A program made the position numbers and the translations under genes. Positions 33,237-43,692 of a DNA stretch of 64,000 bases are shown here, one piece after another. A model generated the notes under the pieces. It had not been told where the DNA came from, searched no databases, and saw only the letters and a program-made list of their open reading frames with translations. The stretch comes from Podarcis filfolensis (lineage: Eukaryota), in the NCBI GenBank assembly GCA_964270895.1, contig OZ185440.1, one strand, 5' to 3'. Position 1 is the stretch's first letter; each line of letters begins with the position of its first letter.

Positions 33237-36200
33237 TTAAATTTGTTCCAATGCCTTCAACTTTGTCTGAAAGAAAAACATGCAAGTCACAATTAAACCT
33301 GCACTGCTTATGGAGAATGTGGACCAGTAAGAAGTAAGCAGCACATAAGCGGCACACAAAGCACCACCAAACCATTCTACGTTCTAAATCTTATATTAAT
33401 AATCCAAAAATTGAGACAGAAGCCACAAACAGAAAACTCATTTAAATTTTGTCCTAAAGGAAGATTCAGTCTTTAAAGTTCCTTTAGCCAGGCTCCTGAA
33501 TCTTACTTTTGGACACAATTTGAATGAGTTTTCTGTTTGTGGCTTCTGTAGTAGATCTTGTACCTTGTTCTCTCAATTTTTGGATTATTAATATAAGATT
33601 TAGAACGTAGAATGGTTTGGTAGTGCTTTGTGTGCCGCTTATAATGCTGCTTGCTTCTTGCTGGTCTACAAGAATTGGCAGCATAGGTTCATTTCTTCAG
33701 TATGGAGAATGTGGAGCAAAGCTTTCGGTCAGGAAATGTATGTAGCAAGTTCCATTTGTTCTGATCTCACTAGAATGGGTGTACTTCAAACCTTGCAGTT
33801 AAATTATAATTTCATTTATGTCATAGGAGAGCTGCACTGTGGCTGTTGCTAGTTGACAAATTGTTCCATTCATAAGTAGGGCTATAGCCCAATTTTACCT
33901 GTTTTCTTGAAGTCTCCTGCAACATTAATTCTGCAATTTTTCTTCCAGAGGGTTCCTTATTGTACAGATCTGTTGTCTCTGGCAGATAAGATTGATCAAT
34001 ACTCTGAAACAAATGACAAGGTCAGCTAGGATGTGATGATCTAATGTGTGGTTAGTTTGTGCTCTGAACAGTTACTGGTAACCTTTTTAGTATACATGAT
34101 TTCTGACAATCCACTATAAACAAGTCACCTGGCTCTGTTTTACAATTTGGCTGCACAGAAAATTGATAAATGGTAAACAAGAAAGTGAGATTGCTTTTGG
34201 TTTTCTCCAGTGGATGGTTAATTAGTATGCTCATCCTTTTGTTTTCCTGGGTGGAATGAAAAGTTTGTGATTAGATTCACTTAGCTAGTATACGTACCCC
34301 TGATGTATATCTGAGTTCATCCCATCTTCCATCTGCTATGCGCACAACCACAGATGCACCTGGCACCAACTGGATCTGGAAGTTTCAAACTATAGCATTA
34401 AGTACATTCTTTTATATGTGTGATTGTTGAACAAGAATAATGATGAAACGTTGGGGATAAAGTAGGGCTTACATAGATTGCAGGCGCCTGTCATACCTGA
34501 GGCTGTTGAGGTTTTCATATAATTACAGAATATCCAAGTGCCTCCTTACTCTATACTGGAGCCTTCTACTCCAGGGTTAGTAGACCACATAAATGTTCCC
34601 CATTGCACCCAAATGAATCTGTAAAGCAGTGGTTCTCAAAGGGTGTGGCAAGAAGATTCAAGGACAATCAAATATTTAAACATTTCAGTGTAGTATACAG
34701 TAGTATAAAAAAAATGTATTTGCAGACTATGGATAAATATATTTACAAAAAAACACTAATTTGAGTTTCTTTTCTCTCAATGTATTTCTTACCAAACAAT
34801 TTGGTATGGCGTGAGCAAGTTTTTATTCTGGAAGTGTGGCCGAAAGAAAAACATTTTAGAACCACTGGTTCAGGTAAATTTTCAATTTAAAGATTACATT
34901 ATAAAGAAACATAGTCTTGTACATTGGTTTATCTGACTTGGCAGTCTTCAGGGAGGATCTCTCTGCAGCACAAACACACATTTTGGAATCCATTTGTATG
35001 ATGGTGGGGTTGATGTTGCAAACCACCTTCTGTCTTGCTCCCAAAAATCTTTGCCAGCCATGCTCCTTGGAACTTTCTGCACTTGCAGTAGTGTTTGAGA
35101 AAATTGGGGTTTGTGTGGTCTATCTTTTGCATCAGTTTTTGTTACTACCCTGTATAATACGATCTAGAAAAGGATTGCAAGTGCTCCCCTTACTTCACCG
35201 TTTTACTTCTTGGATAAGCTTTGTGAAGCTACTGCTCTATGCTTAACTAGTCTCATACCTCTTTCTTTTGGAGCATGCTCTTCATAATGCTGCTGCATTT
35301 CCCTTCAGATAAGGAAGCCAGGATGATCTGTTAAGGAAAGAACAAACCTTGAACCAGAAAAGAACAAACCACCTACTGTTTCTTTGCAGCATTCTTTTAG
35401 TAGACTACTGCAAGAGATTCCTTAAGTGAGAGAAATAGTGAGAAGTGCTCCCAAAACAATACAAAGTAACATTTTTAAAGCTTACTAATTTTGTACACAC
35501 CCCAAACAACATCTTGAAATTAGAAACTGATTGCTGACTTTGGACTAAATTATAGTAGTGTGTAAAAACAAGTGGGTCAAGAGCTGGTGACACGTAAGCC
35601 AAAGATGGGGTGGGGAATGCTTAGCAGTTATAGGCACTGGTTCATTGCTTTGCACCATCACCACCTCCAAAAGCTGGGAGAAATAGTTGCCATTTGTACC
35701 CTTTGTCATTGCTAAGATATTTGCAGGCATTAAGCGTACACAAGTAGGGACTTCAGAAAGTACTGAATTCTGTGGGGATGAGCCATCAGTTCTTAACTGA
35801 TGCTGCATTCACATAAAGCTCAAAAGTGGGGAAGTGGATAACTTTCAGCTTGACAGAATGGTGATATACAGGTGATGCAGGGAAACATTGTACAGAATAT
35901 ATGTGTGTGTGCGCACGCTAACAAGTGCATGCCCCTGCCCAGCTGCTGGAATTTGGTTGTTTTTGCAAGAAAATTGGCATGTATGTCTAACTTTTAGCTG
36001 ATTGGTTAAGTTAACTATACCTGACTGGGAGCCCCCTGGTATAAGGGCAGTTGGTAAATGCCAGTGTTGCAGTAACCTCTGGAAAACACATGAAGAGCTG
36101 TCCATGCCCCACTTTTCTGAGTGTAATGTAACTGTTCCCCTTTTAGCATGACTCTTCTTTGTGCTGCTTGGCATTCTTTTTCACCCGAGGCACATTGGGC

Positions 36201-42200: not shown

Positions 42201-43692
42201 AAACTTAATTCCTAGACTAGTAATAGGAAAACCTTAATTCCTGTGGGGAATCATAGCACCAGGCAACCAGAAATGCCTGCAGCATACCTGTAACCATCAC
42301 TTTATGGGATTCATACATCTTGGTCAGTCTGAGCACAGCCCAGGCAGCCAGCCATTCATCACTCCCTAGTAGTGGCTGGTGTTGAGGCTTGAATCCTTTG
42401 TCCCAGGGGGTGGGTGCCACCCTCCCACTGGGCCAGTGGTAAAAGCGAGCAATAAGGATCATGTCCTGCTGTGGCTCAACATCCCAGGTTTCCTGAAGGA
42501 AACAAAAAGAAGCAGTTCAGGTGAGCCAAGAGTAGTACTATAATTTCCAGCACCTTCTACCCTTCAATTCCCTCTGCCATACACCATACTCAAAAACCAC
42601 CTAACTGTTTTCATGGATTAGGAATGAGCATGTTTTTCTCTGAGCTCAGAACTGCTTTTACACCATTGGCAAGAAAACCCAAAGCCCATATTTTGCAAAC
42701 AAGCAACATGAGTGCTTCTTATAGTTAAGCATGGGCATCCACAAGAATTATCCCCAGGATTGGGGAAAGTAAATACTCTAAACCAATGTAAATACTTATC
42801 TAGCATCAGAGAACTGGTCTACCATTTCTGGTAACAGGTGACTGAGTTGTGGTGAGGTCTGAGCAAACTTGGCCTCTGAGAAACAAATACAGTGGTACCT
42901 CGGGTTAAGAATTTAATTAATTCTGGAGGTCCGTTCTTAACCTGAAACTGTTCTTAACCTGAAGCACCACTTTAGCTAATGGGTCCTCCTGCTGCACCGC
43001 TACCACACGATTTCTGTTCTCATCCTGAAGCAAAGTTCTTAACCCGAGGTGCTATTTCTGGGTTAGCGGAGTCTGTAACCTGAAGCGTCTGTAACCCAAG
43101 ATGCCACTGTACAGTATTCTAGCGCTTGCAGCAATGGTAGTGCTAAGTAACCATCCAATCAGTGCAAGGATAATAACCTGTCTGAGGACACTCTGTGAAC
43201 TTCCCAGCTGGACTGGGATGTAAACCTAAGTCCATCTCCAAGCCTAACACTCTCCTGCCAAAGCACCATTCTATACCTCCTGTTCTCCAAACACGAAGTA
43301 GCCATGTTTAATATTGGATCTCATGGAATCGGTGCAGTAATTCAGTCCCGAGTCCTTGGTGGCAATCACCTGAAATCAAGTTTGAGAAAAATGTAACACA
43401 TGGTCCAACTTCCTTTTTAAGCTTTCTTGGTGTTTCTTCCTAAAATAATAAAGAACTCCAGGATGGTTCTGCTAGAATGCTGAACCAGGGTGCTAGCTGA
43501 ACACCAACTATGACACTGGGGCTATTGACAGAGCCACACATGTTCCATACCTGACCAGTTTTCTGATGGTAACCAGTTAGCCGGACAGCCCCATCTCCCG
43601 GTGGGGCGCCTTTTACTCTATCAAGGATGAACCCTAATTGTCTTCTTTCATTCTGCTGGGATTGTGGCCACTCGAGCACTGCTTCAAATTTC
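33237..43692 (-). CDS. Uncharacterized multi-exon protein-coding region (~760 aa, 17 exons, three C2-like modules); separate gene or C-terminal extension of CCDC17
   Basis: Minus-strand exons in transcript order: 43692-43551, 43369-43277, 42492-42288, 42180-42074, 41593-41453, 40600-40446, 40141-40021, 39228-39112, 38697-38600, 38510-38298, 37907-37733, 37243-37061, 36272-36021, 35327-35259, 34375-34298, 34003-33899, 33266-33237 = 2284 nt. All introns are GT-AG, all phases match, and there is no internal stop. The terminal exon is tentative and the start codon was not identified. Confidence 0.88.
33318..33670. repeat. Long inverted repeat (arms 33318-33469 and 33496-33670, 26-bp spacer)
   Basis: The arms are near-identical reverse complements (e.g. 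ATAAGCGGCACACAAAGCAC..CAAACCATTCTACGTTCTAAATCTTATATTAATAATCCAAAAATTGAGA), with an extra ~23 bp in the right arm. Confidence 0.92.
34627..34867. mobile_element. Degenerate hAT-like MITE
   Basis: Terminal inverted CAGTGGTTCT / AGAACCACTG; no TSD recognised. Confidence 0.45.
40710..41285 (+). mobile_element. CR1 LINE 3' fragment (decayed RT C-terminus)
   Basis: Translates to QFIVNKCREMH...KANSMLGITRKRTENKT...LYKSM..[32 protein letters not shown], the CR1 ORF2 signature. Confidence 0.85.
42890..43109. mobile_element. Tc1/mariner (Tigger-like) MITE
   Basis: TIRs CAGTGGTACCTCGGGTTA / TAACCCAAGATGCCACTG flanked by TA on both sides. Confidence 0.85.

What the first reader, a model, noticed from the sequence alone, without database searches (positions are those of the whole stretch)
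33237..43692. Unnamed 17-exon, ~760-aa minus-strand ORF between NASP and CCDC17
Seen: 17 consecutive exons, all GT-AG with good pyrimidine tracts, phase-matched and free of stops. They encode KFEAVLEWPQ...QLGFILDRVKGAP...HGYFVFGEQE...MILIARFYHWP...WNTGTHTLTLYHGP...DGFDLYIDGARFLPDG...IGWAALNVF...SLNDGAHQLRIF...YVPCATLLVRL...YGIKFALDRGMNLPW...NPPGACYF...WPVWLDGFK...GIYQLPLYQGAP...IQLVPGASVVVRIADGR...SIDQSYLP. An intact frame over 17 junctions is very unlikely by chance. Known: in human, NASP and CCDC17 sit close together tail-to-tail with no intervening gene. Inference: this is a functional coding region retained in this lineage and lost in mammals. The supplied ORF track shows only fragments of it.
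Basis: partly seen in the sequence, partly recalled or inferred. Interest (0 to 1): 0.9.

Follow-up and report, generated by a model that had tools for sequence, protein, structure and literature searches.

The report
C-terminal half of lizard CCDC17
The 17 exons are real and conserved, but they are not a new gene: they are the 3' half of the neighbouring CCDC17 gene, whose long 1453-residue form is already annotated in lizards, turtles, frogs, fishes and invertebrates and has been cut down to its first half in mammals.

Summary
Observation confirmed exactly. There are 17 minus-strand coding exons from 43692 to 33237. All are AG..GT, in phase and stop-free, and together encode 760 aa.

The reading as an unnamed separate gene is wrong. 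The first exon starts at an acceptor site and has no ATG. It is joined in frame, through exon 46768-46611, to the 13 upstream CCDC17 exons. The result is one 31-exon, 1453-aa ORF (ATG at 56805, stop at 33237).

That ORF is 98.7% identical to Podarcis lilfordi CCDC17 isoform X1 and 97% identical to P. muralis CCDC17 (1455 aa). It is collinear with 1400-1570-aa CCDC17 proteins from toad, turtle, alligator, eel, amphioxus, molluscs and corals.

The "lost in mammals" idea holds for this half of the gene. Monotreme and marsupial CCDC17 (575-738 aa in the hit list; the four read residue by residue are 575-667 aa) end at the exon-14 equivalent. They nest inside the long-form clade, and no mammal appears among the C-half hits.

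The half folds (pLDDT 83) into three C2-like beta-sandwiches that no Pfam model covers. dN/dS against Zootoca is 0.36.

Verdict: already known at the annotation level. Low interest.

The parts
56617..56805 (-). CCDC17 coding exon 1; ATG at 56805; C2H2/UBZ-like zinc-finger motif ([18 protein letters not shown])
   Evidence: tblastn of toad, Hemicordylus and P. lilfordi CCDC17; donor GT; sub-threshold zf-C2H2 hits in orthologues
56107..56244 (-). coding exon 2
   Evidence: AG/GT; orthologous exon in Zootoca
55145..55207 (-). coding exon 3
54271..54388 (-). coding exon 4 (coiled coil)
53322..53481 (-). coding exon 5 (coiled coil)
52979..53098 (-). coding exon 6
52403..52536 (-). coding exon 7
51322..51456 (-). 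coding exon 8 (coiled coil)
50167..50393 (-). coding exon 9 (coiled coil and proline-rich stretch)
49713..49798 (-). coding exon 10
49087..49302 (-). coding exon 11; start of the first C2-like module (Pfam PF28455 CCDC17_C region)
48356..48578 (-). coding exon 12; CCDC17_C module
47910..48020 (-). coding exon 13; end of the CCDC17_C module. Donor ACAG|GTGAGT lies just before an in-frame stop, so the exon looks terminal if the donor is ignored
46611..46768 (-). coding exon 14, the linking exon. It is the last exon of the short, mammal-like isoform: reading through its donor (AG|GTGA) adds one Arg and then stops
   Evidence: intron retained in squamate transcript L001
It begins at acceptor ...TTTCAG| in phase 2 and has no ATG
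43277..43369 (-). coding exon 16 (second C2-like module)
42288..42492 (-). coding exon 17 (second C2-like module)
42074..42180 (-). coding exon 18 (second C2-like module)
41453..41593 (-). coding exon 19 (end of the second module and linker)
40446..40600 (-). coding exon 20 (third C2-like module; DGFDLYIDGARFLPD motif)
40021..40141 (-). coding exon 21 (third module)
39112..39228 (-). coding exon 22 (third module)
38600..38697 (-). coding exon 23 (third module)
38298..38510 (-). coding exon 24 (end of the third module, start of the helical insert)
37733..37907 (-). coding exon 25 (helical insert)
37061..37243 (-). coding exon 26 (fourth C2-like module); the query used for the 1.84-billion-protein search
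36021..36272 (-). coding exon 27 (fourth module)
   Evidence: hhalign to CCDC17_C
35259..35327 (-). coding exon 28 (fourth module)
34298..34375 (-). coding exon 29 (fourth module; VVVRIADGR strand)
33899..34003 (-). coding exon 30; donor CAG|GTAAAA. Older models read through it for a further 25 residues (stop codon at 33823-33821)
   Evidence: the LEQI C-terminus is conserved in lacertids and geckos

Best explanation
Window 43692-33237 (minus strand) holds coding exons 15-31 of CCDC17. These exons encode the C-terminal 760 residues of the ancestral long form of that protein. The whole gene in the window has 31 coding exons and encodes 1453 aa. It lies tail to tail with NASP.

Shown:
- The exons are spliced in frame to the upstream CCDC17 exons.
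- The joined protein is nearly identical to annotated lacertid CCDC17.
- The same two-half architecture occurs from cnidarians and molluscs to reptiles, and part of the C-half is matched in a choanoflagellate protein.
- The half is under purifying selection.
- It is predicted with confidence to form three beta-sandwich modules of the C2 type (PI3K / DOCK / Aida / nephrocystin-4 flavour) with a helical insert. At least the last module is a distant paralogue of the CCDC17_C module of the N-half.

Inferred:
- The gene makes two products. One is a short form that ends by reading through the donor of exon 14 and stopping at once; this is the only form left in mammals. The other is the long form, made by splicing on to exon 15.
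- The long protein works in multiciliated or flagellated cells. Its zinc finger and coiled coil would serve assembly, and its four C2-like modules would dock it to membrane lipids or to axonemal or ciliary-tip partners.
- Mammals, the short CCDC17-like paralogue, and probably snakes and most teleosts, dropped the last three modules.
For: - One exon found 30 proteins. The long ones are named CCDC17 in gecko, toad, alligator and bonefish, and their amphioxus and annelid counterparts also carry that name.
- tblastn of these proteins is collinear from 56802 to 33887, across both halves.
- Junctions 47910|46768 and 46611|43692 are GT-AG and in phase. The full 4362-nt ORF has a single, terminal stop.
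- Identity is 98.7% to P. lilfordi CCDC17 isoform X1 (1454 aa), 97.2% to P. muralis CCDC17 (1455 aa) and 95% to Zootoca.
- Newer RefSeq builds merge what older builds split into CCDC17 plus an uncharacterized LOC.
- C-half-only models start at whichever internal Met comes first, or carry unrelated leader sequences.
- Logan transcript contigs of 4.3-7 kb encode 1290-1470-aa forms in invertebrates.
- Squamate transcript L001 has 13 introns removed and intron 14 retained.
- The AF2 model has pLDDT 83 and pTM 0.78. Foldseek matches ferlins, DOCK and PI3K C2, Aida C2, NPHP4, C2CD3 and CCDC33 at E 1e-9 to 1e-13.
- hhalign links the CCDC17_C module to the last C-half module at 89% probability.
- dN/dS is 0.36 for the C-half and 0.28 for the N-half.
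- CCDC17 is a marker of ciliated cells (10.1101/672626) and is listed as a ciliary tip protein (PMC12700831).
- NASP-CCDC17 synteny is confirmed (PMC4082323).
Against: - There is no RNA evidence from this species for the exon 14-15 junction.
- Several RefSeq builds (Lacerta agilis, P. raffonei, Elgaria, Rhineura, Amia, Pristis, several frogs) still give two gene models. Separate transcripts therefore cannot be excluded.
- The ciliary role is taken from human expression and interactome papers on the short form, not from any test of the C-half.
- The C2 assignment rests on a predicted structure. Pfam C2 models score below threshold.
- hhalign links only one of the three modules to CCDC17_C, and only at 89%.
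Confidence: 0.92

Rival explanations
1. The 17 exons form an independent gene with its own promoter and start codon. This is the "uncharacterized LOC" of several RefSeq builds, which merely sits downstream of a short CCDC17.
For: Two-gene models exist in Lacerta agilis, Podarcis raffonei, Elgaria, Rhineura, Lerista, Amia, Pristis, Xenopus laevis and several frogs. A short CCDC17 mRNA that retains intron 14 exists in a squamate.
Against: - The first exon begins at an acceptor and has no ATG.
- The C-half-only models have non-homologous N-termini, or start at the first internal Met (MRSNIKH.. or MILIARF..).
- The same species (P. muralis, Zootoca) were re-annotated as one 1455-aa gene.
- The fused architecture is found from cnidarians onward, and full-length mRNA contigs carry it.
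- The phase match across a 2.9-kb intron would have to be a coincidence.
Confidence: 0.06
2. The exons are a decaying remnant, a unitary pseudogene tail of CCDC17, that no longer contributes to a protein in this lizard.
For: Mammals, and apparently snakes and many teleosts, do without it. The window has a private 1-codon deletion.
Against: - Seventeen exons are intact, with all splice sites in place and no stop or frameshift.
- dN/dS is 0.36, similar to the N-half, with 29 synonymous against 37 non-synonymous changes relative to Zootoca.
- Identity to other lacertids is 95-99%.
- 13 columns are invariant and many more nearly invariant across 50 sequences reaching to a choanoflagellate and other unidentified distant homologues.
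Confidence: 0.01

Closest known systems
CCDC17 long form, as annotated in Podarcis muralis (XP_077784914.1), Podarcis lilfordi (CAI5777312.1), Zootoca vivipara (XP_060132934.1), Bufo bufo (XP_040264098.1) and others
   Same: The same gene. Identity is 95-99% in lacertids, with the same 31-exon structure in Zootoca, the same NASP neighbour, and the same two halves.
   Different: The window lacks one Phe codon at the start of exon 17. Nothing else of note.
Mammalian CCDC17 (monotreme and marsupial proteins of 575-738 aa; human about 622 aa from memory)
   Same: Orthologous N-half: zinc finger, coiled coil (PF28454) and one C2-like module (PF28455 CCDC17_C). It ends at the equivalent of window exon 14 with the ..DPPP.. 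motif.
   Different: It lacks all 760 residues studied here. It also sits on a long branch in the tree.
[quoted passage not shown] of older lacertid RefSeq builds
   Same: Exactly these exons, translated from the first internal Met.
   Different: They are 5'-truncated models with no start codon of their own. In P. muralis and Zootoca they have been superseded by merged CCDC17 models.
Multi-C2 ciliary and membrane proteins: nephrocystin-4, C2CD3, CCDC33, RPGRIP1L, ferlins; single C2 domains of DOCK180, PI3K and Aida
   Same: The same beta-sandwich fold, arranged in tandem. Foldseek probability is 1.00. TM normalised by target is 0.57-0.68 for the DOCK180 and Aida C2 domains.
   Different: Sequence identity is 7-17%. 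No Pfam C2 model passes threshold. Whole-chain TM is only 0.1-0.17, so just the module type is shared, not the overall architecture. Ca2+ and lipid binding are untested.

Membership tests
CCDC17 (long form) | Collinear homology of one polypeptide to both halves of full-length proteins named CCDC17 | tested here: met
   tblastn of gecko, toad, alligator, amphioxus, nemertean and Lingula proteins runs in order from 56802 to 33887. The global alignment is 98.7% identical to P. lilfordi isoform X1.
CCDC17 (long form) | In-frame canonical splicing between the N-half exons and the exons of the finding | tested here: met
   Junctions 47910|46768 and 46611|43692 are GT-AG and phase-compatible. The 4362-nt ORF has one terminal stop.
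CCDC17 (long form) | Pfam PF28454 (CCDC17_middle_coil) and PF28455 (CCDC17_C) in the same protein | tested here: inconclusive
   The local Pfam copy appears not to hold these two models, because it returned nothing for P0083.
CCDC17 (long form) | Conserved position next to NASP, in convergent orientation | tested here: met
   A SHNi-TPR exon lies on the plus strand at 27759-27995. The arrangement is the same in Zootoca locus L002. Synteny is described in PMC4082323.
CCDC17 (long form) | mRNA from this species that joins exons 14 and 15 | not testable with these tools
   No RNA-seq of the window's species could be reached. The support is indirect: merged RefSeq models in P. muralis and Zootoca.
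Independent gene ("uncharacterized LOC") | Own conserved start codon or first exon | tested here: not met
   Exon 15 starts at an acceptor and has no ATG. The N-termini of C-half-only models are unrelated to one another, or begin at internal Mets.
C2 domain superfamily (PI3K / DOCK / Aida-type) | Eight-stranded beta-sandwich that superposes on solved C2 domains | tested here: met
   The AF2 model has pLDDT 83. Foldseek gives DOCK180 C2 (3l4c) TMt 0.57-0.60, Aida C2 (2qzq) TMt 0.68, and ferlins, PI3K, NPHP4 and C2CD3 at probability 1.00. This rests on a predicted model only.
C2 domain superfamily (PI3K / DOCK / Aida-type) | Sequence-profile membership (Pfam C2 or PI3K_C2 above the gathering score) | tested here: not met
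   PI3K_C2 scores 15.6 and 18.9 bits against a cutoff of 26.4 in gecko and amphioxus orthologues. No hits on single exons. The profile against PDB gives only E about 0.4-1 to synaptotagmin C2A.
C2 domain superfamily (PI3K / DOCK / Aida-type) | Lipid or Ca2+ binding | not testable with these tools
   Needs biochemistry.

The most novel reading that the evidence does not exclude
The ancestral metazoan CCDC17 was a protein of about 1450 aa with four C2-like modules. A short isoform already existed, made by reading through the donor of exon 14. That would have allowed the last three modules to be discarded repeatedly: in the mammalian stem, in the gnathostome CCDC17-like paralogue, and probably in snakes and clupeocephalan teleosts. 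On this reading the human "C-terminal" domain (Pfam CCDC17_C) is really the first of four modules, and reptiles, amphibians and invertebrates keep a ciliary function that mammals lost. No Pfam family covers these 760 residues.
Probability: 0.55. Interest if true: 0.35.

Novelty: already known. Interest (0 to 1): 0.15.

Why it matters
For the scan, this is a correct exon reading with the wrong gene boundary, and it should not be counted as a new gene.

Biologically it has modest value. It shows that the widely used human CCDC17, a marker of multiciliated cells, is only the front half of an old protein. The 760-residue back half consists of three C2-like modules with no Pfam coverage and no solved structure. 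It also shows that genome annotations still disagree on whether the locus is one gene or two. Anyone studying CCDC17 function in Xenopus, or comparing ciliary proteomes across animals, should use the long form.

Tried and rejected
- Pfam on ten single exons gave nothing.
- A protein-atlas search with one 61-aa exon gave only noise, with scores of 0.55 or less.
- The first paper search for CCDC17 without whole-word matching returned CCDC170 and similar names.
- My first gene model had 16 exons and read through the last donor. It was corrected after comparing C-termini.
- A PDB sequence search with the C-half profile and with a full-length orthologue found no solved relative.
- No canonical AATAAA lies on the minus strand within 1 kb after either stop. 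Four lie inside intron 14, but none could be tied to the short isoform's 3' end.
- I checked the hairpin in the last intron for ribozymes and microRNAs with Rfam. Only sub-threshold generic hairpin hits came back.
- The exact look-up of the Hemicordylus protein's contig failed.
- I considered a pseudogene and rejected it on intactness and dN/dS.
- I considered a separate gene and rejected it because there is no start codon and because of the merged annotations.
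Full report
**Observation**

All but one of the quoted peptides are found verbatim on the minus strand, and the missing one spans a splice junction. I used annotated homologues as guides and resolved every junction. After one correction, the result is 17 coding exons from 43692 to 33237. Each is flanked by AG and GT, all are in compatible phase, and there is no internal stop. They total 2284 nt and encode 760 aa.

**What it is**

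A search of 1.84 billion representative proteins with one 61-aa exon (37243-37061) returned 30 hits. Several are 1230-1570 aa long, and in those the exon matches about 250 residues before the C-terminus.

These proteins carry the name coiled-coil domain-containing protein 17 in gecko, toad, alligator and bonefish, and their amphioxus and annelid counterparts also carry it. Others are "uncharacterized" entries of the same length in a nemertean and a brachiopod.

They then pass through a linking exon at 46768-46611, and then through all the exons of the finding.

Three points tie the two halves together:
- Exon 13 has a good donor (ACAG|GTGAGT) just before an in-frame stop, which is why it looks terminal.
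- Exon 14 ends in phase 2 at AAG|GTGAGA.

Joined together, the 31 exons give one ORF of 4362 nt and 1453 aa, with the ATG at 56805.

This protein is 98.7% identical to Podarcis lilfordi CCDC17 isoform X1 (1454 aa). It is 97.2% identical to P. muralis CCDC17 (1455 aa) and 95.0% identical to Zootoca vivipara isoform X1. The window is therefore from a Podarcis-like lacertid.

The flank on the plus strand is NASP. It has an SHNi-TPR exon at 27759-27995 and the large acidic exon at 21760-22806. The Zootoca locus has the same convergent arrangement, and published synteny agrees (PMC4082323).

Annotation itself has wavered. Older RefSeq builds of P. muralis and Zootoca, and the RefSeq models on record for Lacerta agilis and P. 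raffonei, give a CCDC17 of 581-694 aa plus an adjacent "uncharacterized LOC" of 689-715 aa. Newer builds of P. muralis and Zootoca merge the two into one 1455-aa CCDC17. The same split is seen in Elgaria, Rhineura, Amia, Pristis, Xenopus laevis and several frogs.

The C-half-only models begin at the first internal Met (MRSNIKH.. in exon 16 or MILIARF.. in exon 17), or they carry unrelated short leaders. That is what 5'-truncated models look like. It is not what a conserved start looks like.

Transcript-like Logan contigs of 4.3-7 kb encode 1290-1470-aa forms in invertebrates.

**Two isoforms (inferred)**

Nearly all short CCDC17 models that I mapped end one residue after exon 14. These come from shark, salmon, Anolis and Rhineura read residue by residue, and from Pogona and snakes by the end coordinate of their match. 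The reason is that reading through the phase-2 donor gives Arg and then TGA. Any consensus donor in phase 2 would do this, so the stop itself is not evidence of selection.

A spliced squamate transcript contig (L001) has 13 upstream introns removed and continues at least 533 nt into intron 14. This fits a real short mRNA, although partly processed RNA cannot be excluded.

**Mammals**

Platypus, echidna and marsupial CCDC17 proteins are 575-738 aa in the hit list. The four read residue by residue (platypus, echidna and two marsupials, 575-667 aa) end within the exon-14 equivalent, with the ..DPPP.. motif. None of the mammalian proteins matches the C-half. No mammal or bird appears among the 63 and 91 hits to the C-half, though both of those lists are capped.

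A maximum-likelihood tree of the N-half puts mammals inside the amniote part of the clade that holds the long forms (support 99). They are separate from a short "CCDC17-like" paralogue clade found in sharks, sturgeons, gars, lungfish and salamanders. I could not search mammalian genomes for decayed exons.

**Selection**

The Zootoca locus has the same 31 exons. Nei-Gojobori dN/dS is 0.28 for the N-half and 0.36 for the C-half, where there are 29 synonymous and 37 non-synonymous differences. An alignment of 50 C-halves, reaching to a choanoflagellate and other unidentified distant homologues, keeps 13 invariant columns and many nearly invariant ones.

**Structure and likely function**

No Pfam family covers the C-half. 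Only sub-threshold PI3K_C2 hits appear. The precomputed families PF28454 (CCDC17_middle_coil) and PF28455 (CCDC17_C) both lie in the N-half.

AlphaFold2 run on the 50-sequence alignment gives a confident model, with mean pLDDT 83 and pTM 0.78. It has three beta-sandwich modules, at roughly residues 17-206, 250-407 and 520-706 of the half, and a helical insert at 420-500.

Foldseek matches multi-C2 proteins at probability 1.00:
- ferlins
- the DOCK C2 domain
- the PI3K C2 domain
- Aida C2
- nephrocystin-4
- C2CD3
- CCDC33
- RPGRIP1L

TM normalised by target is 0.57-0.68 for the single DOCK180 and Aida C2 domains. Language-model neighbours agree. Profile-profile comparison links the N-half CCDC17_C module to the last C-half module at 89% probability, E 2e-6. 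The long protein is therefore best described as a zinc finger, a coiled coil and four related C2-like modules.

In human tissue the short CCDC17 is a marker of multiciliated cells (10.1101/672626; PMC13096173). It is listed among ciliary tip proteins that co-precipitate with DNAAF9 (PMC12700831).

I infer that the extra modules dock the protein to ciliary membrane lipids or to axonemal partners. This has not been tested.

**Verdict**

The exon reading was accurate, but the gene boundary was wrong. The region is the already annotated 3' half of CCDC17, so novelty is low. The residual interest lies in the loss of this half in the mammalian lineage and in three C2-like modules that have never been characterised.

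Noticed in passing
window 33345-33642 (inside the last CCDC17 intron): A near-perfect hairpin of about 298 nt. The outer arms, 33345-33416 and 33571-33642, are 99% complementary; the inner arms, 33416-33469 and 33496-33549, are 93% complementary. It occurs once in the window. Rfam gives only sub-threshold generic microRNA-hairpin matches and no hammerhead. It is probably a foldback or MITE-like insertion.
   Followed up: partly
proteins P0135, P0136, P0164, P0145 (snake CCDC17 models), mapped to window 56802-42083: Snake CCDC17 models (814-918 aa) contain the N-half plus only the first ~200 residues of the C-half. This may be a partial loss of the C-terminal modules in snakes, or it may be truncated annotation.
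   Followed up: no
window, about 42486-42483 (near the start of coding exon 17): The window encodes ..EETWDV.. where every other lacertid protein compared has ..EETFWDV... This is a private in-frame loss of one Phe codon.
   Followed up: partly
proteins P0185, P0188, P0189, P0195, P0197, P0198, P0200, P0170 and others: Gnathostomes have a second, short (about 600-670 aa) "CCDC17-like" paralogue clade on another chromosome. It is well separated from the NASP-linked CCDC17 clade and looks like an old duplicate that also lacks the C-terminal half.
   Followed up: partly
window 33899-33821: Alternative 3' end. Reading through the donor at 33899 adds 25 residues before a stop (stop codon at 33823-33821), as in older RefSeq LOC models. 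Splicing to 33266 instead gives the conserved ..LEQI C-terminus.
   Followed up: yes
window ~14000-16000 and 21760-32000, plus strand: The NASP gene: a G+C-rich promoter region (GC 0.53), a 348-codon acidic ORF at 21760-22806 (the testis-type exon), and an SHNi-TPR exon at 27759-27995.
   Followed up: partly
locus L001 (Logan SRR12656983), 2202-2734: A squamate CCDC17 transcript contig continues at least 533 nt into the intron after the exon-14 equivalent, while all upstream introns are spliced out. This is evidence for an intron-retaining short isoform.
   Followed up: partly
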